From positions 232,120 through 296,119 of the IMG/VR virus record IMGVR_UViG_3300035698_035366: DNA of 64,000 nucleotides; one strand, written 5' to 3'. The notes under the pieces are model-generated. The model did not search any database and was not told the origin of the DNA. It saw only the letters and a list, made by a program, of their open reading frames with translations. Of the stretch, positions 5,280 through 20,870 are shown in pieces. The stretch's first letter is position 1, and the number at the start of each line of letters is the position of its first letter. Made by a program: the position numbers and the translations under genes.

Positions 5280-6221
5280 GTGGATTGGTTAAACTACCTG
5301 TACCATAAAAATCCCGATTTAGCGAAGAAAGAAATACTTCAAGTTAAGTCTGAAGAGAAATTTTTAGAACAAAGCTATAATCTTCTTGCGAATGCCGTAA
5401 AAAACACTTCAAACGCGGTCGATGATCTTATATCAGGTGATAATGATCCATTATTTAAAACCAAGCGTAGAATTAATGCTATGGGACATTTAATACATGA
5501 TGTAATTGCGGTGACATCCAAAGATGGAACGATTGATACAATATCAAATAAATGCAATGCAATGTTTGGCCATGACGAAGAATATTACATTGGGGAAAAC
5601 ATCAGTGAACTTTTTGCTATTAGTGTTAGAGAACAACATTTTGGCTATTTTAATGGTGATATGCCATATGACCATGATACGAACCCAACCATTGAAACAA
5701 TTATGTGTCGTGGTGATCATTCAGAATTTTATGCTGAATTTACAATAGAAAAATTTGAGGAAGACGATGAATGTATGTTTATGATAATAATACGTGATAT
5801 CACTTCTAGAAAAGATGATGAAGGAAAACTTCAAGAAGCCAAAAGAAATGAAAACTTCCACCGAATGTTAGCAACCTGTCTAGATCACATTGACGATATG
5901 GTAATCCTGGTTAATGCGGAAAAAAACGCGGTATATGTTAATAAAGCATTCACTGATCATTATGGATTTTGCCTCGATGATATCGTTGGAAAAAGACCAC
6001 GGGATGTCATCGGAGAACTCCCAATTAATCCAGAATTATATGAAAATATATATAGTGATTATTTGGATAACGGCCTTATATGGACAGGGCAATTACCTAA
6101 TAAAACTAAAAATGGTAATGGTGTTATTGACGATATTAAAATTATTCCTATAATGGGTGATGATAACAAGCCACAATTTTATCTTTCCATCCATAAATTA
6201 GTGGTTGACAATTCTGTATAA
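5280..6221 (+). CDS. Tandem PAS-domain protein with no output domain
   Basis: Two PAS repeats: N...MFG....IG.NI..L...IIRDIT.RK and YVNKAF...YGF...DIVGK.P. Confidence 0.85.
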   Translation: MDWLNYLYHKNPDLAKKEILQVKSEEKFLEQSYNLLANAVKNTSNAVDDLISGDNDPLFKTKRRINAMGHLIHDVIAVTSKDGTIDTISNKCNAMFGHDEEYYIGENISELFAISVREQHFGYFNGDMPYDHDTNPTIETIMCRGDHSEFYAEFTIEKFEEDDECMFMIIIRDITSRKDDEGKLQEAKRNENFHRMLATCLDHIDDMVILVNAEKNAVYVNKAFTDHYGFCLDDIVGKRPRDVIGELPINPELYENIYSDYLDNGLIWTGQLPNKTKNGNGVIDDIKIIPIMGDDNKPQFYLSIHKLVVDNSV

Positions 6222-8573: not shown

Positions 8574-9023
8574 TTACTTGATTAGTTTTTTATAAATTTT
8601 TAATAAATCCGTCTTTTTCTCTTTACCGGTTAATTCTTGCTCGTGTTCTTCAATGAGAATTTTTACCTGTTCGGTTTTATTTAATCGTCTAAATTTCTTC
8701 CAACGATCCGACATGAGACTTGGATGCTCATAAGTTGTATGCTCTTTTTTCAAGTAAACTAAAAGTTGCTCAACCCATTCAACATAATCAGTTCCTCGAC
8801 CAACATGACCAGATCGTTTGAATCGATAGAGCATTGTACCTTCGAGGAGGTTGCATTTTTGGCATAAAACTGAACGGATCATTCCTGTTTCGTGATCGTG
8901 ATCTACGTGTTGATTTGACCCGGATTCATCTCTTAAATCAAGTTTACAAATACCACATTTATAATCTTGTTTCTCTAATAATTCTTTTCGAACTGCTGGT
9001 AAATCTTTGTTTGTAAGCCTCAT
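8574..9023 (-). CDS. Recombination endonuclease VII (T4 gp49-like)
   Basis: Q.YKCGIC...HVDHDHETGMIRSVLCQKCN..EG; likely start ATG 9023 after TAAATA. Confidence 0.9.
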   Translation of the reverse strand: MRLTNKDLPAVRKELLEKQDYKCGICKLDLRDESGSNQHVDHDHETGMIRSVLCQKCNLLEGTMLYRFKRSGHVGRGTDYVEWVEQLLVYLKKEHTTYEHPSLMSDRWKKFRRLNKTEQVKILIEEHEQELTGKEKKTDLLKIYKKLIK

Positions 9024-9036
9024 GCTACTATTTATA

Positions 9037-9070
9037 AGGTTGACAAAAGTGCGATCTGTGTTATAATAAT
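9037..9070 (+). promoter_or_regulatory. Sigma70-type early promoter (representative of a repeated module)
   Basis: aggTTGACA-N17-TATAAT followed by cataacgcaaacaggaga; near copies at 9687, 22155, 33845, 34069, 34332, 40023, 44087, 54040 and on the - strand near 39160. Confidence 0.85.
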
Positions 9071-9096
9071 GACATAACGCAAACAGGAGATACAAA

Positions 9097-9375
9097 ATGA
9101 AAATTTCAGATCGTCATTTAGAAATCTTAAACTTTGTTGCTGCCAATCCCGATTGTTCCACTAACAAAGTGTATATTGGCACCAGCCCCATTTGTCAGAG
9201 TACTGGTCGAACAAGATCGATGGGAACGTCGGGGTGGACTATCCCGGATACTCTCAAACGCAAAGGTTTGATTACAATTAAAAAGATCATGCCCAAAAAT
9301 ACGTCTTATCACAACACTCATTTGGTTCGTTATTACTGGAACCTCACCAAAAAGGGTCGCAATGCAATTGCGTAA
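9097..9375 (+). CDS. Small winged-helix-like protein
   Basis: LEILNFV...LKRKGLITI...YYWNLTKKG pattern; strong promoter and RBS. Confidence 0.55.
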   Translation: MKISDRHLEILNFVAANPDCSTNKVYIGTSPICQSTGRTRSMGTSGWTIPDTLKRKGLITIKKIMPKNTSYHNTHLVRYYWNLTKKGRNAIA

Positions 9376-9381
9376 TTAAAA

Positions 9382-9687
9382 ATGAAGAATTGGACCGAGC
9401 ATCACCAAATTAGTCAATCAATCAAGCACACTTGCGTGGTTAAAACCAATGAGGATTGGTATCCAACAGTCAATGGTGAATTGAAGATGTCGGTGATGAA
9501 ATACAATGCCGGTAAAGCAAACAAACTAAATCGAATTTGTATCTGGGGTGGGGATGATTTTGGAATGGATCGAGATTTCGAAGATTTCGACTCGATAACG
9601 TTTGACGAAATGAAAGAGATTGCGGATAATATCCCAGAACCAATAACTGTTAAATGGCTATTAGCAAATGGTTTCATTTATGCATAA
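9382..9687 (+). CDS. Hypothetical phage protein
   Basis: 101 aa, WGGDDFGMDRDF motif. Confidence 0.6.
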   Translation: MKNWTEHHQISQSIKHTCVVKTNEDWYPTVNGELKMSVMKYNAGKANKLNRICIWGGDDFGMDRDFEDFDSITFDEMKEIADNIPEPITVKWLLANGFIYA

Positions 9688-9748
9688 GGTTGACATCTCC
9701 CAGTTCTATGTTATAATTATAACATAAGCAAACAACAGGAGAAGATCG

Positions 9749-10153
9749 ATGGAAAAGTTGGTAATCAGTTATCAAGTAGGTGACGACACCTATTCGAATG
9801 AAGTAATCGAATGCGTGCATTGTGAATCGAAAGATCATTTCGGTGTCATGTTCATCGAAGAGGTAGAGAAATTTTACAAATCGGAAGATCGGGGCCAGAC
9901 ACTGTGGTCAACCGTTGAAGCTGCAACCTCTGCCGGTAACACTGACAAGGCTAATAATGCTTTCGAAGAATATCTCGAATGGCAAACATCTAGACCACGT
10001 TCTGTTATCGTATGCGGTAAGGATTTTGGTAGTTTCCAGGATATGACGTTTGATATAAAAGGCAAGATGACGTCATTTGAACTTCCGGAAATCCAGACCT
10101 TGGAAGAATGGTTCGATAGTCGAATCCCATACATGGAGAATGAAAATGAATAA
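9749..10153 (+). CDS. Hypothetical early protein
   Basis: Promoter module plus RBS aggag. Confidence 0.65.
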   Translation: MEKLVISYQVGDDTYSNEVIECVHCESKDHFGVMFIEEVEKFYKSEDRGQTLWSTVEAATSAGNTDKANNAFEEYLEWQTSRPRSVIVCGKDFGSFQDMTFDIKGKMTSFELPEIQTLEEWFDSRIPYMENENE

Positions 10154-10701
10154 GTCGATTAGGAATATTCTTATCACATGCTCAATTCTTGTGATCCCGG
10201 CATTTCTTACGGTCCAACACATCAGGAAACAGAATGCCGAAATTGTTTCCTTGAAGAATCAGGTTGGTGTTTTGTCGGCTCTAACATGGACAACAAGCAC
10301 CGCACGAATGAAACCCTCAACGGGAATAAAATCATCCAAACCCCGAACTAATACGAGAAGTATATCACATGCAACGGGTCGGTGGTTGCGACCCGGATAC
10401 ACGCACAAACCCACCTACCGCTCCTTCACGTCAAAGCCTCCAAATTCGATGCATAAAATAAATTATTCAAGAACGGTTGGTCCCGCTACCCCGTGCGGTA
10501 AAACTACAAAGGGAAGGCAATAACACAATGTATCAGAAACTTTTTTACACAGTAACGTCGCCCAATAACGAAGGGTTTCCTGATTGGCAATCCGCCTTGT
10601 TCGCAACAGTCGTTAATTTGGTTATCATCCCTGCCCAGATTTATGGTTTGGTGTTCTTAGTTACGACTGCTATCAAGCACGCTTGGAATTTTTAGAAACA
10701 A

Positions 10702-11037
10702 ATGAAAAACCTTTTCCAATGGATTAATGGTCGGCAATTAGATTGTGAATATCAAAAATTTACAATCTGGTTCTTCTCCATCGGAAATTTCGGAACCGAC
10801 TGTTACATATTGCACTATCTACCAAACACAAATCTTCCGGAGCATACGGATCCAGTAAAAGGAAAGAATCATTATCGTTTAAATATCAACTTGTTTGGCG
10901 GTGGCGGATTTATATGTAAGAATGTAATTTTTAAATTTGGGACAATCGTTTTGTTTCGACCAGACAATGAACCACATTCAGTTATCAATAGTAATCATAA
11001 TCGTTGGATTTTAAGCATCGGATGGGTAAAGAAATGA
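10702..11037 (+). CDS. 2OG-Fe(II) oxygenase-like small protein
   Basis: HTD...H(SV)...R(WILSIGW) facial-triad pattern. Confidence 0.7.
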   Translation: MKNLFQWINGRQLDCEYQKFTIWFFSIGNFGTDCYILHYLPNTNLPEHTDPVKGKNHYRLNINLFGGGGFICKNVIFKFGTIVLFRPDNEPHSVINSNHNRWILSIGWVKK

Positions 11038-11289
11038 ATCACCGTAAAGCAATTAGATCGCATGTATTGAAAAAGCTGTCAACTCGAATTGATGTTCATG
11101 ATGGAACGACTGTTATCACTGAACTAAAAAGGCAAATCCGTGAGGGCGAAGCAATCAAGTTGCGTAAATCAGATTTTCTAAAGAAACGTCATAGCAAATG
11201 GCGATGTTTTTATGATAACAACAACGTCGTTGTTGTATTCGACGAGTTACATTCAACTATTATGACTGTATATCTTTAAGGAATATATT

Positions 11290-11751
11290 ATGGGACGCCG
11301 TAGGAAACGTCGGGAACGAGCATACGATTCCCAGGAAAAGGTGACGCCAATCATCGTTGAATATTGGGGTAACTACCCAGTTGGCGGAAGTGGATTGAGT
11401 ACATCTATCCAAATCACATTACAAGGTATGGCTCTACGAATTGTTGACTTAGAAGAAGAGATCGATGTTAGCTTGTCAATCATTCCTGGATATCACAATG
11501 AAGATAACGAAGTCGGGTATGGTGAAATATTAGCATCTCTACCATATACAATCGAGATTACCAAACATAACTGGAACGGCTTCAAAGACTCGAATTATAA
11601 GCTAAACTTCTCCATTAAGTTGAAGGATTTCGAAACCCTTAAAACATTAATGGAATGGTATGATGACAATGTACCAGAGTTTACCGGCATTGATGAAATT
11701 AATATGGATTTTTCTAGTCGAAGGGTGCAAGCTATTGACCTTCTAGTATAA
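11290..11751 (+). CDS. Hypothetical protein
   Basis: 153-aa ORF with RBS aagga. Confidence 0.6.
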   Translation: MGRRRKRRERAYDSQEKVTPIIVEYWGNYPVGGSGLSTSIQITLQGMALRIVDLEEEIDVSLSIIPGYHNEDNEVGYGEILASLPYTIEITKHNWNGFKDSNYKLNFSIKLKDFETLKTLMEWYDDNVPEFTGIDEINMDFSSRRVQAIDLLV

Positions 11752-12048
11752 ATAAACTTAACAGGAGTACAGAGAGCGGAACCTTCCCAGAAGATTCCAA
11801 AGAATTATATTTTAGCAGATGTTTATCTGTGCATGTAGCAAAAGCGAAGCTAGTAAACAAAAAAGTTTGCTAAAATATATAGTAGTTACAACAACCTAGA
11901 AAAAGGATTGTGGATTTTTCCAATTTTTTTCAAAATAAAGGTTGACGTAACTACGAACCCACTGTATACTCCTAAAACTAAGCAAAGGAAACGATGCTTG
12001 GTGGGATTAACCTCCCAAAATTATTTTCAACTTTTTTAAAAAAAGGAG

Positions 12049-12077
12049 TTGACAATAGATCGAAGTTAGTGTAGTAT
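12049..12077 (+). promoter_or_regulatory. Sigma70-type promoter for the leader/tRNA array
   Basis: TTGACA-N17-TAGTAT; a second TTGACG-N17-TATACT at 11942-11970. Confidence 0.8.
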
Positions 12078-12146
12078 ATAAAAACATTAACAAGCGTTAA
12101 CGGGCAATGGTGCCCAAGCAATTTTAAGGACTTAGGACAAACGAAA

Positions 12147-12368
12147 ATGTTTATCGAGACCAGACATATACAGACAGCGATTGCAAATGGCGTAAGCCAT
12201 ATTGTCGAGCTGTTGACTGGTGGGCTAGAAACATTATCACCTTGGTCAAACGGTGGAATCGGCTCAATGCAACTGGTCCAAATATGTGAAGATGATACAC
12301 GACCAGTAAAGAACCCTGAATATCGTTTTATTAATATTAAGGGTGGAGGTTCAAGTATGTTGCGGTAA
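12147..12368 (+). CDS. Putative attenuator leader peptide of the tRNA array
   Basis: 73 aa, all 20 amino acids, 41 distinct sense codons; last codons form the 5' strand of an antiterminator. Confidence 0.65.
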   Translation: MFIETRHIQTAIANGVSHIVELLTGGLETLSPWSNGGIGSMQLVQICEDDTRPVKNPEYRFINIKGGGSSMLR

Positions 12369-12437
12369 AGAGCACATACATAGCGCACACGGCGCAAATT
12401 GAACCTTCCAAGCAAAACGGCTTAGGAAGGTTTTTTT
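12344..12437 (+). terminator. Intrinsic terminator with overlapping antiterminator (attenuator)
   Basis: Terminator aaccttcc-aagc/gctt-a-ggaaggtt + T7 (12402-12437); tggaggttcaa (12344-12354) pairs with ttgaacct(t)cca (12399-12410). Confidence 0.8.
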
Positions 12438-12762
12438 GTACCTAAGCGTTAAGATCGGAGAAGCGGAAGAGTGAAACAGTTGGAGTTAATGAATGGAAAA
12501 TGTGACTTAGAGATTACTTAAAGAATTACCAAATTGGCATCGAGGTGTCAAGGAGGTGAGTGGGATACGCGGAACGAGGCTGCGGGATTAACCACTATAA
12601 ATAAGATCCAAACGGGCGGCGGCGCGGAGTAACACAAAGCGTCGGTAGACACAGTCGTAGTTGACAGAGTCTACGGTGGTGTAGCCGTATGCGGCAACAT
12701 AACGCCACCAAAAAATAAGCAGAATTTGGGGGTGGGTTCACCGTCCGTGGCCCACCCCATAA

Positions 12763-12837
12763 CGCCCCATAGTTTATCGGTTTAGAATTCCGGTTTTTCA
12801 CACCGGCGAGCGGGGTTCGATTCCCCGTGGGGCGACC
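12763..12837 (+). tRNA. tRNA-Glu(TTC)
   Basis: cgcccca/tggggcg acceptor; ccggt-ttTTCac-accgg. Confidence 0.9.
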
Positions 12838-12851
12838 CAGTTAAAATTTAT

Positions 12852-12924
12852 AGCGGGTTGGAGAAGTAGTTATCTCGACGTCCTCATAAGGCGTAGGTCG
12901 GCAGTGCAATTCTGTCACCCGCAA
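12852..12924 (+). tRNA. tRNA-Met(CAT), initiator-like
   Basis: acgtc-ctCATaa-ggcgt; mismatched 1:72; T-loop variant gtgcaattc. Confidence 0.8.
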
Positions 12925-13040
12925 CAAAACTTGGCTCTCGACTGACCGTCCCGATATTAAGAGCAAAGGTCATATGATATTTAATTATCTGCCACAAGCA
13001 GATATGAAGGTCATTAAAAAATTGCCGCCAAGTATTTTAT

Positions 13041-13115
13041 GCTCCGTTAGCTCATTGGTGGAGCGGGACACTGAAGATGTCCGCGTAGGTAGTTCGATTC
13101 TATCACGGAGCACCA
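13041..13115 (+). tRNA. tRNA-Phe(GAA)
   Basis: ggaca-ctGAAga-tgtcc; CCA end. Confidence 0.92.
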
Positions 13116-13121
13116 ATTTAT

Positions 13122-13197
13122 GCCTTTCAAGCTAATCTAGAGAAAGCGACGGATTGAAGACCCGTAGAGCCTGGAGCGTAACCAGGGAAAGGCACCA
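13122..13197 (+). tRNA. tRNA-Phe(GAA), non-canonical T-loop
   Basis: acgga-ttGAAga-cccgt; T-loop agcgtaa; CCA. Confidence 0.8.
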
Positions 13198-13301
13198 AAC
13201 ATTATTTGGTCACTGCAAAGTGTGTTAGCGACGGCTAATAGTTTAGGTGAGTATAGCACTCTTAAAGGGTACAGAACCGTCGCCTAATGCCAATGTTTTA
13301 T

Positions 13302-13390
13302 AAGGGTTGATCCTGCCCGCGGTATCAAACCCGTGGTCTTGAATAAGGCAGGAAGCAGGACGAGGGGAGCGTTACCTCCAACCTTTGCTA
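13302..13390 (+). tRNA. Atypical Trp-like tRNA with rearranged D region and ambiguous anticodon loop (tatcaaac)
   Basis: aagggttg/caaccttt acceptor, G73; tcctgc pairs with gcagga 3' of the anticodon arm. Confidence 0.5.
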
Positions 13391-13396
13391 ATTTAT

Positions 13397-13476
13397 AGGG
13401 GTGCCTGTATCGGTGAACTAAGCCGTCTCCAAAACGGTGCTTCGGCCTGGGAGTTCGAATCTCTCCACCCCTGCCA
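13397..13476 (+). tRNA. tRNA-Trp(CCA)
   Basis: gccgt-ctCCAaa-acggt; G73-CCA; odd D arm. Confidence 0.85.
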
Positions 13477-13485
13477 ATATAATAT

Positions 13486-13570
13486 GGGAAGGTAAAGCTA
13501 GTGGCTCTAGCAAGTGGTCTGTAAAACCACTCTCTTCGGGGGCGAGGATCGATACCTCACTTTCCCACCA
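13486..13570 (+). tRNA. tRNA-Tyr(GTA)
   Basis: gtggt-ctGTAaa-accac; long variable arm; CCA. Confidence 0.88.
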
Positions 13571-13772
13571 ATTAAAGCAGATACAGTCAATAAACATTCT
13601 GCCGTAGACACCATGTGTTGGGCGCAACTCATGTTGAAAACGGGTGACCCTGTTGAGACTATATGAAGGACTTGGTCTCCTTTAATCTGCACATGGCCAG
13701 AGAATATCGAACGAGGTGGTGGCTGATCCTGTCCGGGATGGGCCGTATGTTTCATACCGGGGGCCACCCTAA

Positions 13773-13850
13773 CGCCCCATAGTTTATCGGTTTTAGAACG
13801 CCGGGTTCTCAACCCGGAAAGCGCGGGTTCAACTCCCCGTGGGGCGACCA
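13773..13850 (+). tRNA. tRNA-Glu(CTC)
   Basis: ccggg-ttCTCaa-cccgg; paralog of 12763; CCA. Confidence 0.88.
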
Positions 13851-14136
13851 AAATAATACTTGACAATAAATTGGATGTTGTTATAATACTTAAATACTGT
13901 TCGTTAATTGGACAGATTTACAACCGGGGAACTAGTCCACTACGACGCCGGAAACATTGTAAATCCCGAAAGACGATTTAGTGTGATGGTTATAAGGTTA
14001 GACGGTGTCGGTATGTGGTCAACCCGCCCGTGACGTTATAATCACAGCGCAGGCTGGAGGCCTTAATGCGGGACGCAGGTACCCGAGGTGAGATGATAGG
14101 CCGTTAGTGGATAGGATGGGATCCATTTATTTTTAT

Positions 14137-14211
14137 GTTCCTGATGCCGACGAAGTGAGGCCTTGGATTGCAAATCCAAAGTACCGGATGCAAGCGCCGG
14201 CGGGAACTCCA
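14137..14211 (+). tRNA. tRNA-Cys(GCA)
   Basis: ttgga-ttGCAaa-tccaa; U73-CCA; variant T-loop. Confidence 0.8.
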
Positions 14212-14311
14212 AAACAATACTTGACACTTATAAATAGATGTGTTAGTATTACAGAATAAGCATTGCGCTTATAACGCCATAATGGCAGTCAACATGATAA
14301 AGGAAAAGACA

Positions 14312-14650
14312 ATGGAATTAACAACTCAACATCAAGCTTCGATTTATAAAGGCATTGGTCACGTAATTGGGGCCATCCCAACCAAAGCATTTAGACTTCA
14401 TAACAATTTGCGGAATGTCAACCGATCAGTTCGGTTTTATGACAAATATGGAAACTCCATGTTATTTTCCGGTAATGAAATCTGCACCAACGATACTCTT
14501 AATCAACAAGGTGCTAGGTTGAATGTCGGTGAAGCAGGCCAAAAATACTCCTTGATTTGGCCAGATGACTTGGAAAAATTCAGGGAGATGTTCCAATACG
14601 ACGTTTCAAAGAAAAATGAAGTATTAATCGAAATCGTATCAATATTCTAA
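14312..14650 (+). CDS. Hypothetical protein
   Basis: Likely start ATG 14312 after aaggaa. Confidence 0.6.
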   Translation: MELTTQHQASIYKGIGHVIGAIPTKAFRLHNNLRNVNRSVRFYDKYGNSMLFSGNEICTNDTLNQQGARLNVGEAGQKYSLIWPDDLEKFREMFQYDVSKKNEVLIEIVSIF

Positions 14651-14764
14651 TTCAACAATTTGCATTACAGTCCACAGCGTTCAAGAGCTTAGGCATTAGG
14701 TGGCTACTGTGGTTGAACCCGTTCAAATCGGGTTAAGAGACTCTTGATAATGCAAAGATTTTAT

Positions 14765-14840
14765 GGACCATGACTCAGCAAGGAACGAGACCTGCTTTAC
14801 ATGCAGGATTTGCGGGGAGCGTTACCTCGATGGTCCACCA
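14765..14840 (+). tRNA. tRNA-Val(TAC), non-canonical T-loop
   Basis: cctgc-ttTACat-gcagg; T-loop agcgtta; CCA. Confidence 0.82.
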
Positions 14841-14845
14841 AATTA

Positions 14846-14982
14846 TGAGGTAGTTGGCTAGGTTGGCGGTTCGACTCCGTCGTTCCTGATGGTCAGGTGT
14901 GGTTCGAGTCCACGTTAAATTAAGCGGAAAACAAATAGGGTAGCACCCGCCTATTAAGGTTCAACTCCTTAATACCTCACCA
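14846..14982 (+). ncRNA. tRNA-like RNA with three T-arm hairpins
   Basis: tgaggta/tacctca-CCA acceptor enclosing ggttcgactcc, ggttcgagtcc and ggttcaactcc hairpins; no anticodon arm. Confidence 0.6.
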
Positions 14983-15053
14983 ATATAGTGTGCGCCAAAT
15001 GGCGAAGGCTCGGTCGCTCCGAGCATCTTGCGGGCCAAATTGGCCCGCATTAT

Positions 15054-15129
15054 CCGGGTGTGGGAAAGTCTGGCTTAATCCGTTCGCTTTGGGAGCGAAA
15101 GACCGCAGGTTCAAATCCTGCCCCCCGGA
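15054..15129 (+). tRNA. tRNA-Pro(TGG)
   Basis: ttcgc-ttTGGga-gcgaa. Confidence 0.85.
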
Positions 15130-15149
15130 CAGAGAAATTATAAACATAA

Positions 15150-15225
15150 CAGGGTATAGCTCAATCTGGTAGAGTAGGGGCCTCGGAAGCTTCGGGTGCC
15201 GGTTCGAATCCGGCTATCCTGACCA
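15150..15225 (+). tRNA. tRNA-Pro(CGG)
   Basis: ggggc-ctCGGaa-gcttc; CCA. Confidence 0.9.
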
Positions 15226-15235
15226 ATAAAACAAT

Positions 15236-15320
15236 GGGTGGCGCAGCTAATGCGATGTCTGGGACCGACGCGGGCTCTTAATCCGTGAACCAAGGGGTTC
15301 AATTCCCTCGCCACCCGCCA
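15236..15320 (+). tRNA. tRNA-Lys(CTT) with expanded D region
   Basis: gcggg-ctCTTaa-tccgt; gggtggc/gccaccc; ~25-nt D region. Confidence 0.7.
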
Positions 15321-15326
15321 ATTTAT

Positions 15327-15408
15327 CCCTGAGTGGCGGAACGGTATACGTAGCGAGCTTAAACCTCGTGGCTTCGGCATGTGAGTTCGACTCTCACCTT
15401 AGGGACCA
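15327..15408 (+). tRNA. tRNA-Leu(TAA)
   Basis: gcgag-ctTAAac-ctcgt; variable arm; CCA. Confidence 0.9.
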
Positions 15409-15418
15409 ATAAAATAAT

Positions 15419-15494
15419 GGACCGGTAGCTCAGAGGCAGTAGCGACGGGCTCTTAACCCGTAGGTCGAGATTTCGAAATTCTCCCGGTTCACCA
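15419..15494 (+). tRNA. tRNA-Lys(CTT)
   Basis: acggg-ctCTTaa-cccgt; CCA. Confidence 0.9.
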
Positions 15495-15545
15495 AAAATA
15501 TTGACATTAAACATAGATATGTGTATAGTTTATAAATACAAAATT

Positions 15546-15631
15546 GCCTGAGTGGCGGAACCGGTATACGCGAAGGTCTCAAAAACCTTTGTCCTTGCGG
15601 CATGTGAGTTCGAATCTCACCTCAGGCACCA
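15546..15631 (+). tRNA. tRNA-Leu(CAA)
   Basis: aaggt-ctCAAaa-acctt; CCA. Confidence 0.92.
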
Positions 15632-15674
15632 ATATATAAATTTAGGCAGGATTAATCCGTAAGTCCTATTTTAT

Positions 15675-15753
15675 GCCCGAGTGGTCAAATTGGTAAAGAC
15701 GTCCGCCTAAGAAGCGGAAGATTTTGTGGGTTCGAGTCCCACCTTGGGCACCA
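15675..15753 (+). tRNA. tRNA-Leu(AAG)
   Basis: tccgc-ctAAGaa-gcgga; A34 anticodon; CCA. Confidence 0.88.
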
Positions 15754-15850
15754 ATAGATTTTTGTTCGATTGTGCGGCTGGTCCCAAACAATCGTTCAAG
15801 AGAAGACCAGTTGAACGCAAACTGACCAGAGTGCGTTATTAAACTGGAGG

Positions 15851-15914
15851 CCGTCGTCTAAAAGAAAGGACGCCCCCGTTGAGGGGGAAATGGTGGGTGC
15901 GAGTCCCCTCGGCA
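15851..15914 (+). pseudogene. Degenerate tRNA-like element
   Basis: D-like tcgtctaa..ggac, ccccc-gttga-ggggg arm, gggtgcgagtccc T arm, short acceptor. Confidence 0.45.
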
Positions 15915-15939
15915 AAGTGCTTCTTACATAAATAGTTAT

Positions 15940-16164
15940 ATGAGATACGAACACATCATACAAGAAGAACCAGTTATATCAAGTTGGATTTCAGATCTAA
16001 CGTATGATGATGGTGACGTGATCATGGCATTAAATTCAGGGCGTGAATATCAAATACAAGATGTTCCGTTAGATGTTTATGAATCATGGATGGAATATGG
16101 TTCAAAAGGTCAATTTTGGCACGGGTATATCCGTGGTATGTACCAAGTTTGGCGAATTGCTTAA
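15940..16164 (+). CDS. KTSC domain protein
   Basis: SSWISDLTYD...SGREYQIQDVP..VYE.W....SKGQFW..IRG.Y. Confidence 0.88.
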   Translation: MRYEHIIQEEPVISSWISDLTYDDGDVIMALNSGREYQIQDVPLDVYESWMEYGSKGQFWHGYIRGMYQVWRIA

Positions 16165-16192
16165 ATTTACAATACAATTATACTTATACTGA

Positions 16193-16269
16193 TCCTAGCG
16201 GTCCCTGTCGGCAAGGGAGCGGCGCTGTTAACGCCGTTGTTCCAGGTTCGAGCCCTGGGCTAGGAGCCA
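16193..16269 (+). tRNA. tRNA-Asn(GTT)
   Basis: cggcg-ctGTTaa-cgccg; tcctagc/gctagga; G73-CCA. Confidence 0.85.
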
Positions 16270-16409
16270 AATTTGTTCAGACCTGATTTGCAAGTCAACT
16301 GAACATCGCTCGGACGATGGGCTTCATGAGCTTATCACATGCGAATTAAAATGGCTTTAACTGCGGCCGCGGTTGACTCCAGGAGATTTGCTTCCGAGCA
16401 ACCAATTAT

Positions 16410-16493
16410 GCGACGCGTAGGCGAGAAGGTTCTGCCGCTGGGCTTCCACCCCAGTCCGAAAGGTGTAGGGTTCGATTCCCTCGCGTCGCTCCA
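16410..16493 (+). tRNA. tRNA-Gly(TCC) with 8/4 fold and long variable arm
   Basis: gcgacgcg/cgcgtcgc 8-bp acceptor, 4-bp T stem aggg/ccct, ctggg-ctTCCac-cccag, U73-CCA. Confidence 0.75.
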
Positions 16494-16501
16494 ATATAAT
16501 T

Positions 16502-16660
16502 TTCTCTGTAGCTTAATGATCTTCATTGATGACGGTTCCGACGGGAACGGAATGAAGGCCGCAAGGCGTTGCAATGGTCTAGAACATTGTGTTAGTCGCC
16601 GATAAAAGGGCAGAGCGCCACCCGCGGAGGTTGGAGGTAGGGTTCAATTCCCTTAGAGAA
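16502..16660 (+). ncRNA. tRNA scaffold with ~90-nt structured insertion in the D loop
   Basis: ttctctg/tagagaa acceptor; tagcttaa...ggcagagc D arm split by an insert; agggttcaattccct T arm. Confidence 0.55.
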
Positions 16661-16668
16661 TTTAGTTT

Positions 16669-16742
16669 GCTCCTGTGATGTTCTGGGAACATATCCGGCT
16701 GTCTACCGGACGAGGTGGGTTCAATTCCCATCAGGAGCGCCA
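16669..16742 (+). tRNA. tRNA-Asp(GTC)
   Basis: tccgg-ctGTCta-ccgga; G73-CCA. Confidence 0.85.
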
Positions 16743-16745
16743 ATT

Positions 16746-16818
16746 GGGCGTGTGGTGAAGCGGTTAACACAGTGGATTGTCTATCCACCATTCGCAGGTT
16801 CAAGTCCTGTCACGCTCG
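16746..16818 (+). tRNA. tRNA-Asp(GTC)
   Basis: gtgga-ttGTCta-tccac. Confidence 0.87.
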
Positions 16819-16868
16819 CAAAGCTTAAATACTAAATAGTATATAATAATATTATTGAGGTTTAAATT

Positions 16869-17537
16869 ATGCGATTAAATGAAATAGACGCAAAACGTCC
16901 AGATCAAAGACATCCTGATGTAGAATACGAAGAGGTTCCAAAAAAGAAATCAGAACCTGATGTGATCGACAGCGTTATCGCATACCTTTCTGGCGGAGAA
17001 TCAGGAGCATACACAAAGCTTGCAAAAAGATTCAAAGATATAAAGGACGCTGAGGCGCAACTTATCGAGAATAAAAATAAATTAAATGCAGAACTAAAAG
17101 AAAACGTTGATAATTTATTTCCAGAAGCCGACGATATTTTTACAAGAGTTGTTGATACCGCGTCATTAGTTATTAAAATTGGGAAAGCAGAAAAAGCTCA
17201 CCAGATTGATAGATTTGATGCAGAAGGTTATATCAAAGAAATTGAAAAAATGTTTCCGGAGTTAACTGAATCTTTTAAAACAGTCCGTGAAAAATTTACC
17301 ACAGTTCAAGAGATTGCTGCAAAATCTCCCAAGCTTTTAACTCCCAAGTTGAAAGATAAAGGTGACGACAAGATTAAGAAAACAACAAAAACCGAAACCG
17401 TTATTTACGAAGGAATCGGCGAAAGATTTTCTCAGTATCTTCAAGCAGTTGCTAATAAAATCGGAAGGCTTCTTAGTAATTGGGACAAGAAATATGCAGA
17501 TATCAATTCAAGATTAGAATCTGCTATTGCAAATTAA
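16869..17537 (+). CDS. Hypothetical late protein (MRLNEI-type N-terminus)
   Basis: 222 aa; TAAATA motifs and RBS gagg upstream. Confidence 0.7.
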   Translation: MRLNEIDAKRPDQRHPDVEYEEVPKKKSEPDVIDSVIAYLSGGESGAYTKLAKRFKDIKDAEAQLIENKNKLNAELKENVDNLFPEADDIFTRVVDTASLVIKIGKAEKAHQIDRFDAEGYIKEIEKMFPELTESFKTVREKFTTVQEIAAKSPKLLTPKLKDKGDDKIKKTTKTETVIYEGIGERFSQYLQAVANKIGRLLSNWDKKYADINSRLESAIAN

Positions 17538-17560
17538 TCAAATACATATTATAATATTAT

Positions 17561-17650
17561 ACTTGGCGTAGCTCAGGGATGCTTGATAAGCAGGGTAGAG
17601 CAGCCGCGCGAGAACAGCGGTGTGACGGTGGTTCGAAACCATCCCCAAGT
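17561..17650 (+). ncRNA. tRNA-like RNA with a hairpin inserted in the D loop and a 9-nt anticodon loop
   Basis: tagctcag[ggatgcttgataagcag]ggtagagc; gccgc-gcgagaaca-gcggt; ggttcgaaacc. Confidence 0.55.
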
Positions 17651-17660
17651 ACAAAATAAT

Positions 17661-17739
17661 GCCCTTGTGGTCAAATTGGAAAAGGCGCTCGGTTTAGGTC
17701 CGAGAGATTTTGCAGGTTCGAGTCCTGCCAGGGGCACCA
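17661..17739 (+). tRNA. tRNA-Leu(TAG)
   Basis: ctcgg-ttTAGgt-ccgag; CCA. Confidence 0.9.
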
Positions 17740-17747
17740 GAAATTAT

Positions 17748-17821
17748 ATCCTTGAGGTCCAGGGAATGGACACCTCCTTGTCCGGGAGGAGATCACCACT
17801 TCGATGTGGTCAAGGATGCCA
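17748..17821 (+). tRNA. tRNA-Asp(GTC), divergent
   Basis: cctcc-ttGTCcg-ggagg; atccttg/caaggat; G73-CCA. Confidence 0.72.
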
Positions 17822-17902
17822 AGCTTAGAAGTGGATGGGAATTGACACCTTGTTACTCTCCCAGGTAATGTAGGATGCAAGCCACGCTAGGCGTAAAATT
17901 AT

Positions 17903-17980
17903 GCATCTGTATCCCTGTCCGCTGCGAACGGATTGAAAGGTAATTGGATCATGCACGTTCGAATCGTGTCAGGTGCGCCA
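17903..17980 (+). tRNA. tRNA-Arg(GCG) with D-loop displaced 3' of the anticodon arm
   Basis: gcatctg/caggtgc; only 7 nt before gtccg-ctGCGaa-cggat; taattgga after the arm; canonical T arm; CCA. Confidence 0.72.
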
Positions 17981-17990
17981 AAACAAATAG

Positions 17991-18147
17991 GTGAACGGTA
18001 GTAGCCTTTGATGTGCGGATGGAGTTCGATTCTCCTACTGGATGGGTTCGACTCCCACCCGGGCTTGGTTTAGCAAAACATCATACGCGAGAGCGTGTCG
18101 CGTCAACATTGGTCGATCCAACGGAAACCAAGGATTGAATGGCGCAC
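17991..18147 (+). ncRNA. Structured RNA with two tandem T-arm hairpins
   Basis: ggagttcgattctcc and gggttcgactccc side by side; tgatgt/acatca and cttggttt/aaaccaag pairings. Confidence 0.5.
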
Positions 18148-18158
18148 TTTTATTTTAT

Positions 18159-18237
18159 GCGTCTGTATGCCGCCGGTTTTCGAGACCGGAGAAAGCTAAC
18201 TGGACACATGCGGGTTCGACTCCTGCCAGGCGCGCCA
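18159..18237 (+). tRNA. tRNA-Arg(TCG) with D-loop displaced 3' of the anticodon arm
   Basis: gcgtctg/caggcgc; ccggt-ttTCGag-accgg; agctaactgga after the arm; CCA. Confidence 0.72.
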
Positions 18238-18253
18238 AGTTATAAATACTTAC

Positions 18254-18922
18254 ATGATATATAATGAATTATTAGAAGGCCGCGACGCATCACTTTGGCA
18301 TGGTATACAAATGAAGTATGCCCATGAGATTCTATCTAATATGAAAATAGAAGGTCGAACAACTCAAAGATATTGGCCTGACGGAATGCGGAGAAGAGAA
18401 GATGATCCAGACTATGAAGATAGCTTTTGGATGAAAGGCATTTCAACAACTCGTGATCCGTTATATGCATCTAGTTGGGGAAGCTTAGTTTTAGAATTAG
18501 ATCAAGCAGCGATAACACGGAATTACAAAATTGTTCCGTATAGCTGGGGATTCCATATGAAGGGTGCCAGCACTAAGAGAGAACGAGAAGAATTTATTAT
18601 TCTGTCGATGACTGGCAAGTCTATGAAAGATTATGAAAAAATATCAAATGATTCCATGCAAACTGATAACCCAACAAGTGCAATGAATTTATGGTATGCC
18701 CCAGAAGGAAAAGCATTAGATTTGAACAAATGCTTAAAAGGTGTATACATATCGGATTCAACATTTGAAATATATGGCGAAGATAATGATGAGATACAAT
18801 ACATCATGAAACATCCAAAATTCAAAGGATTGCTTCCAAGCACTATTCGTTCGGACAATCCAGAAAAGAAAGCTGCACGTAAAGAATTACGTGACCGAAT
18901 TAATAGTCAAATCAAAAATTAA
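18254..18922 (+). CDS. Hypothetical late protein (possible ADP-ribosyltransferase-like fold)
   Basis: LWHG...GISTTRD...EREEF pattern; leaderless after TATAAATA. Confidence 0.55.
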   Translation: MIYNELLEGRDASLWHGIQMKYAHEILSNMKIEGRTTQRYWPDGMRRREDDPDYEDSFWMKGISTTRDPLYASSWGSLVLELDQAAITRNYKIVPYSWGFHMKGASTKREREEFIILSMTGKSMKDYEKISNDSMQTDNPTSAMNLWYAPEGKALDLNKCLKGVYISDSTFEIYGEDNDEIQYIMKHPKFKGLLPSTIRSDNPEKKAARKELRDRINSQIKN

Positions 18923-18934
18923 ATTCTATATTAT

Positions 18935-19011
18935 GGTGAGCATGGTGTAGTGGTTGCACAACAGACTGTGACTCTGTTAGAGTTGGGTTCGATTCCCACT
19001 GTTCACCCCCA
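18935..19011 (+). tRNA. tRNA-His(GTG)
   Basis: acaga-ctGTGac-tctgt; G-1 and C73. Confidence 0.9.
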
Positions 19012-19068
19012 CAGTTTGACAACATGACAAATATACTGTATATTTATTTTGTAATTATATGGGATTGA

Positions 19069-19581
19069 ATGATGTCTACTGTTATTTGGTATAAAGGAAA
19101 ATTATATTCCGATAGTCGGGTTACGAATGACTTATTAAATACGGAAACAGGTGATCTAGTAGATAGAATAATTGGAAAAGGTAAGAAACTTTTCCGCCAT
19201 CCCAAGAAAAATAAAATTTATGGTGTTACTGGTACGCTTGAAGGATTCGCTGATTTCAAAAGTCGTGGATATAAAGGATCATTGCGCTGGGGTACTGAAT
19301 CTTCATCGAAAACTTTGGTCATTGAATGGGATGGCGAACATTTGATTGGATGGGTTTACAAGGAAAAATATATCAAATGGCTTAGGATTTACATTTCCAA
19401 GTTTGTAAAAACAAAATATAATTGGAAGGATGCTCCAGAATTCAAGATATCAATGGGATCTGGTACCGAATATGCTAGTGAAATGTTAGATTACGGGTGT
19501 TCAATTAGAGAAGCAATTCAATATGCATCGGATCGAGATGAATATACCGACGATGAAGTTGTTACGTTAGAATTAGAATAA
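19069..19581 (+). CDS. Ntn-hydrolase / proteasome-subunit-like phage protein
   Basis: N-terminal STVIW..GKLYSDSRVT, SMGSG..YA, AI.YA...D.YT pattern. Confidence 0.6.
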   Translation: MMSTVIWYKGKLYSDSRVTNDLLNTETGDLVDRIIGKGKKLFRHPKKNKIYGVTGTLEGFADFKSRGYKGSLRWGTESSSKTLVIEWDGEHLIGWVYKEKYIKWLRIYISKFVKTKYNWKDAPEFKISMGSGTEYASEMLDYGCSIREAIQYASDRDEYTDDEVVTLELE

Positions 19582-19582
19582 T

Positions 19583-19657
19583 GGTCTGTTAGTACAGTGG
19601 CTAGTACCCCCGCCTGATGAGCGGGTAACTCCAGTTCGAATCTGGAACGGACCACCA
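19583..19657 (+). tRNA. tRNA-Ile(GAT)
   Basis: cccgc-ctGATga-gcggg; CCA. Confidence 0.88.
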
Positions 19658-19681
19658 AAAAGGTTTGTAAGATAATCCTAT

Positions 19682-19751
19682 AGCGAGTTGGCCTGGGGCC
19701 GCGCAGTGTTTTGAGCTCTGCTGGGAGGGATCGTAACCTTCACCCGCTGCT
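19682..19751 (+). tRNA. Degenerate tRNA-Gln(TTG)-like
   Basis: gcagtg-ttTTGag-ctctgc; mini D arm; T-loop atcgtaa. Confidence 0.5.
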
Positions 19752-19760
19752 AAAATTTAT

Positions 19761-19834
19761 GGGCTTGTAGCTTAGTTGGCTAAAGCATTCGGTTGATAAC
19801 CGAAAGACCGCTGGTTCGAGTCCAGCCAGGCCCA
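19761..19834 (+). tRNA. tRNA-Ile(GAT)
   Basis: ttcgg-ttGATaa-ccgaa. Confidence 0.92.
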
Positions 19835-19851
19835 CCCAATTTTTTAATCAT

Positions 19852-19927
19852 GGTCTTGTAGTGTTAGCGGCAAGCACGCTGGTTTTGTATTCCAGTAGCC
19901 GGAGTTCGAATCTCCGCGGGACCTCCA
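19852..19927 (+). tRNA. tRNA-Thr(TGT)
   Basis: ctggt-ttTGTat-tccag; CCA. Confidence 0.82.
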
Positions 19928-19939
19928 ATTAGAAGCTTT

Positions 19940-20014
19940 GCCCTTAAAGCATATAAGGTGATGCACGGCTCCCGTAAAGCTGTGAACCACGTTCGAGTCG
20001 TGGTAAGGGCACCA
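19940..20014 (+). tRNA. tRNA-Thr(CGT)
   Basis: cggct-ccCGTaa-agctg; CCA. Confidence 0.82.
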
Positions 20015-20020
20015 ATTTAT

Positions 20021-20097
20021 TGCGGAGTGGAGCAGTGGTCAGCTCGTCGGTCTCATAAGCCGAAGGTCGAAGGTTCGAATCCTTCCTCACGCAACCA
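20021..20097 (+). tRNA. tRNA-fMet(CAT)
   Basis: tgcggagtggagcagtggtcagctcg initiator-type 5' half; ctCATaa; CCA. Confidence 0.88.
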
Positions 20098-20106
20098 AAC
20101 AAAAAT

Positions 20107-20869: not shown

Positions 20870-20870
20870 T

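What the first reader, a model, noticed from the sequence alone, without database searches (positions are those of the whole stretch)
12049..12440. Ribosome-sensing attenuator in front of a phage tRNA mega-array (all-amino-acid leader peptide)
SEEN: a sigma70 promoter precedes a 73-codon ORF, an intrinsic terminator (12402-12437) and then the main tRNA array. The last codons (tggaggttcaa, 12344-12354) can form 11 bp with the terminator 5' strand (12399-12410), supported by inner hairpins gtatg-t-tgc/gca-catac (stop codon in the loop) and gcgc/gcgc. The ORF uses all 20 amino acids and 41 different sense codons; the first 17 codons are all different, and four different Arg, four Gly and four Leu codons occur. 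KNOWN: this is the logic of trp/his-type ribosome-mediated attenuation. INFERENCE: a ribosome reaching the stop melts the antiterminator and the tRNAs stay off. Stalling anywhere upstream (starvation, or host anticodon nucleases such as PrrC, RloC or PARIS) gives read-through. The phage would thus have a general tRNA-damage sensor rather than a single-amino-acid one.
Basis: partly seen in the sequence, partly recalled or inferred. Interest (0 to 1): 0.93.

Follow-up and report, generated by a model that had tools for sequence, protein, structure and literature searches.

The report
Translation-sensing attenuator before phage tRNAs
A giant phage from an Antarctic lake has a small translated gene whose last codons can pair with, and so disable, a strong transcription stop signal placed in front of a block of the phage's own tRNA genes; it looks like a switch that lets more tRNA be made when ribosomes lag, but the case rests on sequence analysis of only two phage lineages.

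Summary
These are promoter P2 (12049-12077), a 73-codon ORF (12147-12368), hairpins H1 and H2, a strong intrinsic terminator (12402-12437), and an 11-bp alternative pairing between ORF codons 66-70 and the terminator's 5' arm.

The alternative pairing is not chance. Only 0.2-0.3% of shuffles or genomic decoys reach its energy gain. It dominates the nascent RNA until the terminator's 3' arm appears. It is kept and strengthened in the only known relative, where the terminator shows a compensatory U-A to C-G change.

The ORF is really translated: dN/dS is 0.2, all three indels are in frame, and changes favour third positions. No sigma70-like promoter lies between the terminator and the next seven tRNA genes.

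A translation-coupled attenuator is therefore the best reading, at about 0.45. It differs from trp/his: there is no anti-antiterminator, so untranslated RNA should read through, and there are no regulatory codon runs. It can govern only the first promoter-less block, a conserved ~305-nt unknown RNA plus seven tRNAs.

The "all-codon tRNA-damage sensor" remains conjecture. Codon diversity equals what unbiased codon use gives, and the peptide is under purifying selection. No experiment and no third lineage exist.

The parts
11942..11970 (+). Upstream promoter P1 (TTGACG-17-TATACT) with an A/T-rich upstream tract; tandem with P2
   Evidence: 10 of 12 matches. In L002 both hexamers are kept while the spacer changes at three positions.
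12049..12077 (+). Promoter P2 (TTGACA-17-TAGTAT), preceded by an A/T tract
   Evidence: Identical in L002 except for one extra A in the spacer.
12087..12115 (+). Two small 5'-UTR hairpins (12087-12100 and 12102-12115)
   Evidence: Both substitutions in L002 fall in the loops, and there is one inserted base between the hairpins.
12134..12137 (+). Shine-Dalgarno AGGA, 9 nt before the ATG
   Evidence: Read from the sequence. It is the same type and spacing as the phage's other genes.
12147..12368 (+). Translated 73-codon leader ORF (67 codons in the relative)
   Evidence: dN 0.047, dS 0.234. Binomial p 0.004 for a deficit of nonsynonymous changes. 10 of 17 changes are at third positions (p 0.03). 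Three indels are all in frame. The same 73-aa ORF was called as a gene on the contigs of this phage returned by the look-up (L004-L007), and the 67-aa homologue on both contigs of the relative (L002, L003). No homologues exist beyond the two lineages.
12313..12344 (+). Hairpin H0 inside the ORF, directly 5' of the antiterminator strand
   Evidence: (probability 0.95-1.0). The relative's 3-nt deletion lies in its loop. Statistically weak (z -1.1 to -1.4).
12344..12354 (+). Antiterminator 5' strand (codons 66-70, Gly-Gly-Gly-Ser-Ser), containing GGAGG
   Evidence: Invariant in L002.
12355..12379 (+). Hairpin H1; the stop codon UAA 12366-12368 is in its loop
   Evidence: -9.1 kcal/mol. The only changes in L002 are two loop bases, which create a tandem stop UAAUAA.
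12383..12395 (+). Hairpin H2 (GCGC / 5-nt loop / GCGC)
   Evidence: -6.6 kcal/mol. Invariant in L002.
12399..12410 (+). Antiterminator 3' strand, which is also the lower 5' arm of the terminator (shared segment)
   Evidence: The U12407-to-C change in L002 turns 7+4 bp with a bulge into 10 contiguous bp.
12402..12437 (+). Intrinsic terminator: 12-bp stem with one bulge, 6-nt loop, U7 tract
   Evidence: It is one of only three clear + strand terminators in 64 kb. The 12407/12427 pair changes from U-A to C-G in L002.
12455..12760 (+). Conserved structured non-coding RNA of unknown class; first product of read-through
   Evidence: About 93-95% identical to L002, against 55-85% for flanking protein genes. 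Changes lie in loops, in G.U/G-C switches, or in one compensatory pair. No Rfam match at E<=10. Not a tRNA or tmRNA.
12763..13850 (+). Promoter-less first tRNA block: Glu(UUC), Met, Phe, Phe-like, Trp, Tyr, Glu(CUC)
   Evidence: No sigma70-like + strand promoter lies between 12077 and 13860.

Best explanation
This is a two-state, translation-coupled transcription attenuator.

**Proposed mechanism**
1. Host sigma70 RNA polymerase starts at the tandem promoters P1 and P2 and transcribes a translated 73-codon ORF.
2. As the 5' arm of the terminator emerges, it pairs with ORF codons 66-70 (12344-12354). This closes a three-way junction over hairpins H1 and H2 and withholds the lower nine base pairs of the terminator stem.
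3. If the pioneer ribosome has kept up with the polymerase, it is unwinding codons ~63-73 or sitting on the UAA in the H1 loop. The antiterminator then cannot form, the terminator does, and transcription stops at about 12437.
4. If the ribosome lags, or never loaded, the antiterminator holds long enough for the polymerase to pass. Lag means anywhere before about codon 62, for any reason that slows decoding or initiation.
5. Read-through transcribes a conserved ~305-nt structured RNA and the next seven tRNA genes.

The net effect would be negative feedback from translational capacity onto phage tRNA supply.

**Shown here:** the elements, the mutually exclusive pairings, their non-randomness, their conservation, and that the ORF is translated.

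**Inferred:** termination at 12437, ribosome dependence, the sign of the response, and its physiological trigger.
For: - **AT forms first.** AT pairing has probability 1.00 in the nascent RNA up to 12414, whatever the 5' context. The terminator takes over (0.73-0.94) only when complete.
- **AT is non-random.** The gain is -11.9 kcal/mol in the window and -13.9 in L002, in the 0.1-0.3% tails. The other two clear terminators lack it.
- **Conservation pattern across 12344-12437.** The four uncompensated changes all fall in unpaired positions (p 0.013). There is one compensatory pair in the terminator. The same 5'-arm change strengthens AT. The terminator-minus-AT gap is ~5.3 kcal/mol in both lineages.
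- **Footprint masking.** Masking at or near the stop removes AT. Masking upstream keeps it.
- **Calibration.** For the E. coli trp attenuator, the same method gives a 2:3 to 3:4 barrier of 5.8 kcal/mol, against 4.8 here. Its terminator is 2.7 kcal/mol more stable than its antiterminator, against 3.8-5.2 here.
- **The ORF is translated**.
- **The terminator's placement.** It is one of three clear ones on the + strand in 64 kb. It sits between tandem promoters and 1.4 kb of promoter-less stable-RNA genes.
- **Nucleotide conservation.** The locus is 83-99% identical per 100-nt bin (90% or more in all but two, both inside the ORF), where neighbouring genes are 55-85%. Leader dS is 0.23, against 0.9 to above 2 next door.
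- **No rut-like region.** The ORF is G-rich rather than C-rich (C/G 0.69), so Rho polarity is not predicted to confound (inference).
Against: - There are no experimental data at all.
- Comparative support rests on two lineages. No third was found in IMG/VR, JGI metagenomes, GTDB genomes, 5.8 billion proteins or 1.84 billion representatives.
- At equilibrium the terminator wins. The computed AT-to-terminator barrier is low (4.8 kcal/mol), and the terminator's apical 4 bp are free to nucleate.
- There is no anti-antiterminator, so the design lacks the safeguard of classical attenuators.
- A 222-nt leader needs tight ribosome-polymerase coupling.
- The peptide is under purifying selection (dN/dS 0.2), which a pure sensor would not need.
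- An internal GGAGG-7 nt-AUG(Met71) could let ribosomes load directly next to AT, bypassing the upstream codons.
- The uniformly low divergence of 11800-12840 could partly reflect a recently exchanged cassette rather than selection on the switch.
- The phage may use its own antitermination factor or a non-sigma70 promoter that the scan cannot see.
Confidence: 0.45

Rival explanations
1. This is an ordinary small phage gene with its own promoter and terminator. The downstream RNA and tRNAs would be made by constitutive leak, or by a phage-encoded processive antitermination system. That would be a lambda-like layout: promoter, small ORF, hairpins, timing terminator. The antiterminator pairing would be incidental, or would only set a fixed level of leakiness.
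For: - The peptide is under amino-acid-level purifying selection, with only conservative replacements.
- The RBS is of the usual type.
- The terminator is thermodynamically favoured.
- H1 and H2 could be factor-binding hairpins.
- Timing terminators after small early genes are common in phages (own knowledge: lambda PR-cro-nutR-tR1).
Against: - The AT pairing is in the 0.1-0.3% tail in both lineages and absent at the other terminators.
- The 5'-arm change in L002 preserves and improves AT.
- No boxA/boxB-like match was established.
- The protein has no homologue, no family hit and no confident fold.
Confidence: 0.28
2. The AT/terminator switch is real but is set by a trans-acting ligand, not by ribosome position. 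The ligand would bind the three-way junction (H1/H2). Candidates are the 73-aa product itself (autoregulation), another phage protein, or an RNA such as a tRNA.
For: - The three-way junction, H1 and H2 are invariant apart from loop bases.
- The peptide sequence is conserved.
- There is a faint, sub-threshold Pfam match of the relative's protein to an L30e-like RNA-binding domain (E 0.06).
Against: - There is no T-box or other riboswitch match at E<=10.
- The Pfam hit is below threshold and absent for the window's protein.
- The AF2 model is low confidence (pLDDT 52.7).
- The AT 5' strand and the stop codon sit exactly where a terminating ribosome would interfere.
Confidence: 0.12
3. The ORF is a purpose-built sampler of all amino acids and most codons. 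Damage to any tRNA species, from starvation or from anticodon nucleases such as PrrC, RloC or PARIS, would then switch on the phage tRNA genes.
For: - Both lineages use all 20 amino acids.
- Codon counts are 41 of 73 and 43 of 67 distinct. These are the 5.5% and 0.2% tails against the phage's own genes.
- Phage tRNAs are known to counter tRNA-targeting defences (PMC10264068, PMC11464382, PMC11555353).
Against: - The diversity equals the expectation for unbiased codon use (42.7 and 40.8). Nucleotide-level constraint or weak expression would also give this.
- The codon-adaptation index is unremarkable, at the 12th percentile.
- Any ORF of this length reports stalling at any codon.
- Only seven tRNAs depend on this terminator.
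- No defence or counter-defence gene is linked.
Confidence: 0.12
4. The ORF is not translated and the whole 12084-12437 segment is a non-coding leader RNA.
For: - Codon usage is as even as random sequence.
- Nucleotide conservation is very high.
Against: - The ORF stays open in both lineages despite three indels, all in frame.
- Changes show a third-position excess, and dN/dS is 0.2.
- The start context is normal.
Confidence: 0.03

Closest known systems
Leader-peptide attenuators of amino-acid operons (E. coli trp, his, thr, ilv, pheA)
   Same: - A promoter-proximal translated ORF, a terminator, and an antiterminator that shares a strand with the terminator.
- A ribosome at the end of the ORF blocks the antiterminator.
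- Comparable energies and refolding barrier.
   Different: - 73 codons instead of 14-32.
- No run of regulatory codons.
- No 1:2 anti-antiterminator, so no termination is predicted without translation.
- The output is tRNAs and an unknown RNA, not biosynthetic enzymes.
- No sequence or Rfam relationship.
bmrB-bmrCD of Bacillus subtilis, and other attenuators that respond to general slowing of translation (PMC4191407; Term-seq antibiotic-responsive leaders, own knowledge)
   Same: - A long leader ORF (53 aa).
- The translating ribosome acts as a non-specific sensor: slower translation gives time for the antiterminator, hence read-through.
- Rare or unbiased codons tune the basal level.
   Different: - In bmrB the terminator, antiterminator and anti-antiterminator all lie inside the ORF. 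Here only the AT 5' strand does.
- The regulated genes there are a drug exporter.
- It is a host system, not a phage one.
- There is no homology.
T-box riboswitches
   Same: Terminator/antiterminator control of translation-supply genes in response to the state of tRNA.
   Different: - A T-box senses uncharged tRNA directly by RNA-RNA contact and needs no ORF.
- There is no T-box match here at E<=10.
Phage timing terminators with processive antitermination (lambda PR-cro-nutR-tR1; own knowledge)
   Same: The order is the same: early promoter, small ORF of about 70 codons, hairpins, terminator, later functions.
   Different: - No boxA/boxB match was established.
- Those systems need no antiterminator pairing, whereas a significant one is present here.
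Stable-RNA operon leaders (rrn P1-P2 with boxB-boxA-boxC; own knowledge)
   Same: - Tandem near-consensus promoters with A/T-rich upstream tracts driving tRNA genes.
- A 7-nt resemblance to the 3' half of boxA at 12087-12093.
   Different: - rrn leaders hold no translated ORF and no intrinsic terminator.
- The boxA resemblance is too short to count.

Membership tests
Ribosome-mediated (leader-peptide) transcription attenuator, general class | Translated ORF between the promoter and the regulated genes | tested here: met
   ORF 12147-12368 has AGGA 9 nt upstream. dN/dS is 0.2, indels are in frame, and changes favour third positions.
Ribosome-mediated (leader-peptide) transcription attenuator, general class | Intrinsic terminator upstream of the regulated genes, with no intervening promoter | tested here: met
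   Terminator 12402-12437, supported by a compensatory pair in L002. No sigma70-like + strand promoter lies between 12077 and 13860. Non-sigma70 promoters cannot be excluded.
Ribosome-mediated (leader-peptide) transcription attenuator, general class | Antiterminator mutually exclusive with the terminator and formed first | tested here: met
   Probability 1.00 in the nascent RNA. Energy gain lies in the 0.1-0.3% tails in both lineages.
Ribosome-mediated (leader-peptide) transcription attenuator, general class | Ribosome position in the ORF decides which structure forms | tested here: inconclusive
   Geometry and constraint folds fit. No functional data exist.
Ribosome-mediated (leader-peptide) transcription attenuator, general class | Read-through responds to translation in vivo or in vitro | not testable with these tools
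   This needs reporters, in vitro transcription, or Term-seq.
trp/his-type amino-acid attenuator | Tandem or clustered regulatory codons for the cognate amino acid | tested here: not met
   All 20 amino acids are used and no runs occur. The commonest is Gly, 9 of 73.
trp/his-type amino-acid attenuator | Anti-antiterminator (1:2) that gives termination when the leader is not translated | tested here: not met
   The best candidate, 12311-12317 with 12345-12352, has probability <=0.05. H0 forms instead and does not compete with AT.
trp/his-type amino-acid attenuator | Short leader peptide (about 14-32 codons) | tested here: not met
   73 codons in the window and 67 in L002.
bmrB-type general translation-sensing attenuator | Long leader ORF with weak codon adaptation whose translation rate sets read-through | tested here: inconclusive
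   The ORF is long and codon use is unbiased. Rate dependence is untested.
bmrB-type general translation-sensing attenuator | Terminator and alternative structures embedded in the leader coding sequence | tested here: not met
   Only the AT 5' strand is coding. The terminator starts 34 nt after the stop codon. For bmrB see PMC4191407.
bmrB-type general translation-sensing attenuator | Sequence homology to BmrB or its leader | tested here: not met
   No homologues other than the one sister lineage. No Pfam, NCBIfam or PHROG hit above threshold.
T-box riboswitch | Stem I / specifier loop and T-box antiterminator bulge (Rfam RF00230) | tested here: not met
   No match at E<=10 in 11800-12780.
Lambda-type nut site / rrn antitermination leader | boxA and boxB elements recognised by Nus factors or N | not tested
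   There is only a 7-nt resemblance recalled from memory. The host is unknown and no model was available.

The most novel reading that the evidence does not exclude
A giant phage carries its own homeostat for translational capacity. A 60-plus-codon, codon-unbiased ORF would time the pioneer ribosome against RNA polymerase. When decoding slows for any reason, including cleavage or depletion of host tRNAs by defence nucleases, an antiterminator wins. The phage then switches on a block of its own tRNAs, together with a new ~305-nt structured RNA that carries the only perfect 10-nt Shine-Dalgarno sequence in the region. This would be the first attenuator known to control viral tRNA genes, and the first regulated response of phage tRNA supply to tRNA damage.
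Probability: 0.15. Interest if true: 0.85.

Novelty: new variant of a known kind. Interest (0 to 1): 0.62.

Why it matters
Phage tRNA arrays are now thought to serve both codon supply and escape from tRNA-cleaving defences (PMC10264068, PMC11464382, PMC11555353). How their expression is controlled is essentially unknown. My literature searches found no attenuator in front of phage tRNA genes.

If this switch works as proposed, it would show that a virus can measure the host's translation speed and adjust its own tRNA output. It would also extend leader-peptide attenuation to stable-RNA genes and to viruses. Finally, it would give a compact part of about 400 nt that reports the lag between ribosome and polymerase.

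The element also flags a conserved unknown RNA as the first product of read-through.

Tried and rejected
- **Known RNA family.** There was no Rfam hit except tRNAs at gathering thresholds, and only a spurious miRNA match at E<=10.
- **Protein homology for the ORF.** Nothing beyond one sister lineage in the 5.8-billion word-indexed search or the 1.84-billion HMMER profile search. Nothing in INPHARED tblastn, Pfam, PHROGs, NCBIfam, PADLOC or PDB sequences.
- **More relatives for covariation.** Only self-hits or random hits came from IMG/VR (four scans), the JGI metagenome scan, the GTDB genome scan, and searches with neighbouring proteins.
- **Antisense 145-aa ORF 11978-12415.** It is broken into three pieces in L002, so it is spurious.
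- **A 32-aa ORF inside the conserved RNA.** It shows only nonsynonymous changes, so it is not coding.
- **trp-like 1:2 pairing.** Negligible probability.
- **Start-codon sequestration giving a one-ribosome window.** It was suggested by RNAalifold. Accessibility of the RBS stays ~0.45-0.5 at all transcript lengths, and the fold z-score in the window is -0.5.
- **Rare-codon enrichment.** Not significant, at the 12th percentile.
- **Repeat of the module elsewhere in the window.** None.
- **Protein fold.** It then gave a low-confidence model: pLDDT 52.7, pTM 0.23, one N-terminal helix and a disordered C-terminus. I did not run a fold search because the model is too poor.
- **Known ribosome-arrest motifs in the peptide.** I recognised none (own knowledge, not a test).
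Full report
**Context**

The window is part of a 296-408 kb phage genome (contig lengths). One source, IMG 3300035698, is an Ace Lake (Antarctica) metagenome (PMC9324843).

All genes run on the + strand. ARAGORN finds 34 tRNA genes, and up to 47 with a relaxed threshold. Neighbouring genes include a T4-type endonuclease VII, a PAS-domain protein and a GluQRS-like synthetase fragment.

INPHARED holds no relative at the DNA or protein level.

**Check of the observation**

- P2 (TTGACA-17-TAGTAT, 12049-12077) is found by the scan.
- The ORF 12147-12368 encodes 73 residues with all 20 amino acids and 41 distinct codons. The first 17 codons are all different, and Arg, Gly and Leu each use four codons.
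- The terminator is a 12-bp stem (12402-12413 / 12420-12432, one bulge) with a 6-nt loop and seven U.
- The alternative pairing 12344-12354 / 12399-12410 (11 bp, one bulge) encloses H1 and H2. H1 is 12355-12379, with the stop codon in its loop. H2 is 12383-12395.
- One correction: the first tRNA begins 325 nt after the terminator.
- One addition: a second promoter, P1, lies at 11942-11970.

**Is it more than chance?**

The antiterminator is.

- Adding the terminator's 5' arm to the 69 nt upstream gains -11.9 kcal/mol. Only 0.3% of dinucleotide shuffles and 0.2% of 927 genomic decoys reach that.
- My own scan finds just three clear intrinsic terminators on the + strand in 64 kb. The other two have no such partner, gaining -0.8 and -4.6.
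- In the nascent RNA up to 12414 the antiterminator has probability 1.00, whatever the 5' context. Once the 3' arm is present the terminator has 0.73-0.94.

Codon diversity is only marginal.

- Against 73-codon windows of the phage's own long ORFs, the three features sit in the 4-11% tails. Codon count and all 20 amino acids together occur in 1.1%.
- The relative's 43 of 67 distinct codons is rarer, at 0.2%.
- Both values equal what completely unbiased codon use gives, 42.7 and 40.8.
- The sound statement is therefore "no codon bias", not "designed sampler". The codon-adaptation index is at the 12th percentile.

**Comparative evidence**

Only one other lineage exists in any collection I could reach. 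It is represented by L002 and L003, from Logan assemblies. Searches of IMG/VR, JGI metagenomes and GTDB genomes, and searches with neighbouring proteins, gave nothing more.

The comparison is nevertheless informative.

- *Identity profile.* The 11800-12840 segment is 83-99% identical per 100-nt bin, and 90% or more in all but two bins, both inside the ORF. Flanking protein genes are 55-85% identical.
- *Coding signal in the ORF.* There are 7 synonymous-only and 6 conservative nonsynonymous codon differences, plus three indels, all in frame.
  - dN is 0.047 and dS is 0.234.
  - The deficit of nonsynonymous change has p 0.004.
  - Third positions take 10 of 17 changes, p 0.03.
  - The ORF is therefore translated and its peptide is constrained.
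- *Synonymous sites.* dS is four-fold or more below that of neighbouring genes (0.9 to above 2). Codons 1-18 and the 5' UTR are invariant apart from loop bases and three single-base insertions.
- *The switch region, 12344-12437.*
  - The four uncompensated differences all fall in unpaired positions: the H1 loop twice, the terminator loop, and the last U (p 0.013).
  - The pair 12407/12427 changes from U-A to C-G.
  - The same 5'-arm change turns the antiterminator into 10 contiguous base pairs. Its gain becomes -13.9 kcal/mol, in the 0.1% tail.
  - The terminator-minus-antiterminator gap stays near 5.3 kcal/mol in both lineages.
- *After the U tract.* About 18 nt after the U tract are divergent. 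Conservation then resumes.
- *Antisense ORF.* The antisense 145-aa ORF is not conserved.

**Mechanism**

Masking a ribosome footprint at the stop codon, or three codons before it, removes the antiterminator and leaves the terminator. A footprint far upstream leaves the antiterminator intact. A ribosome whose A site is before about codon 62 should not interfere.

There is no anti-antiterminator. The best candidate has probability <=0.05, and hairpin H0 forms instead without competing. An untranslated transcript is thus predicted to read through. This is a two-state design that differs from trp/his.

The computed refolding barrier from antiterminator to terminator is low, at 4.8 kcal/mol. The same calculation on the validated E. 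coli trp attenuator gives 5.8 kcal/mol and a similar stability difference. The numbers therefore do not disqualify the element.

The ORF is G-rich rather than C-rich, so a Rho loading site is not expected. This is inference.

**What the switch could control**

No sigma70-like + strand promoter lies between 12077 and 13860. Read-through is therefore needed for two things:

- a ~305-nt conserved structured RNA with no Rfam family;
- seven tRNA genes: Glu, Met, Phe, Phe-like, Trp, Tyr and Glu.

Beyond 13860 the array has its own near-consensus promoters at 13860, 14221, 15501, 19016 and 20512. The element therefore cannot gate the whole array.

**Comparison with known systems**

The logic is that of ribosome-mediated attenuation.

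The closest functional analogue is the bmrB leader of B. subtilis. It is a 53-codon ORF whose translation rate sets read-through in a non-specific way (PMC4191407). It is closer than trp/his.

Three defining trp/his features were tested and not met: regulatory codon runs, the 1:2 structure, and a short leader. There is no T-box match.

A lambda-like timing terminator (promoter, small ORF, hairpins, terminator) and factor-dependent control remain live rivals. So does the possibility that the 73-aa product is a functional small protein. The AF2 model is uninformative (pLDDT 52.7).

**Verdict**

I rate a translation-coupled attenuator at about 0.45. The specific "all-tRNA damage sensor" I rate at about 0.12-0.15.

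It would be a new variant of a known kind. No report of an attenuator before phage tRNA genes turned up.

Noticed in passing
window 12455-12760: A ~305-nt non-coding stretch between the terminator and the first tRNA. It is about 93-95% identical to the only relative, while flanking protein genes are 55-85% identical. It folds into a row of hairpins, with changes in loops, in G.U/G-C switches, or in one compensatory pair. It has no Rfam match at E<=10 and is not a tRNA or tmRNA. It is probably a new structured phage RNA.
   Followed up: partly
window 12550-12559: The only perfect 10-nt Shine-Dalgarno consensus (AAGGAGGTGA) in the 64-kb window lies inside that conserved RNA and is invariant in L002. 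No start codon sits at a usable spacing, and none of the phage's genes inspected uses such a long SD.
   Followed up: partly
window 12345-12368: GGAGG, then 7 nt, then AUG (Met71) UUG CGG UAA. This is an internal SD plus start for a three-codon mini-ORF, in frame with the leader ORF and conserved in L002. It could let a ribosome load directly next to the antiterminator strand.
   Followed up: no
window 11942-11970 and 12049-12077: Tandem promoters with A/T-rich upstream tracts ahead of stable-RNA genes, reminiscent of rrn P1-P2. In L002 the hexamers are kept while the spacers vary. A 7-nt resemblance to the 3' half of boxA at 12087-12093 was not tested.
   Followed up: partly
window 13122-13197, 13397-13476, 13486-13570, and others: Relaxed ARAGORN adds up to 13 tRNA-like genes missed at default settings, giving 47 in all, all on the + strand. 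They include Trp(cca), Tyr(gta) and a second Phe. Some have odd lengths.
   Followed up: partly
window 12745-12837 and 13757-13849: tRNA-Glu(UUC), with part of a preceding GC-rich hairpin, is duplicated as tRNA-Glu(CUC) at 83% identity. Each copy has a hairpin ending 3 nt before the tRNA.
   Followed up: no
window 9040, 9690, 13860: Three perfect 12-of-12 sigma70 consensus promoters, and an excess of promoter-like sites overall (47 found, 28 +/- 5 expected in 9000-21000). This suggests the region is read by host RNA polymerase.
   Followed up: no
window 27663-28526; 62469-63422; 29410-30519; 5280-6221: Auxiliary genes among the tRNAs: a 287-aa class I Glu/Gln-type synthetase catalytic domain (GluQRS-like), PRPP synthetase, a protein with a PEP-CTERM motif, and a PAS-domain protein.
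   Followed up: no
L002 6204-6209 (relative), equivalent to window 12366-12371: In the relative, the two loop changes of H1 create a tandem in-frame stop (TAATAA) at the end of the leader ORF.
   Followed up: no
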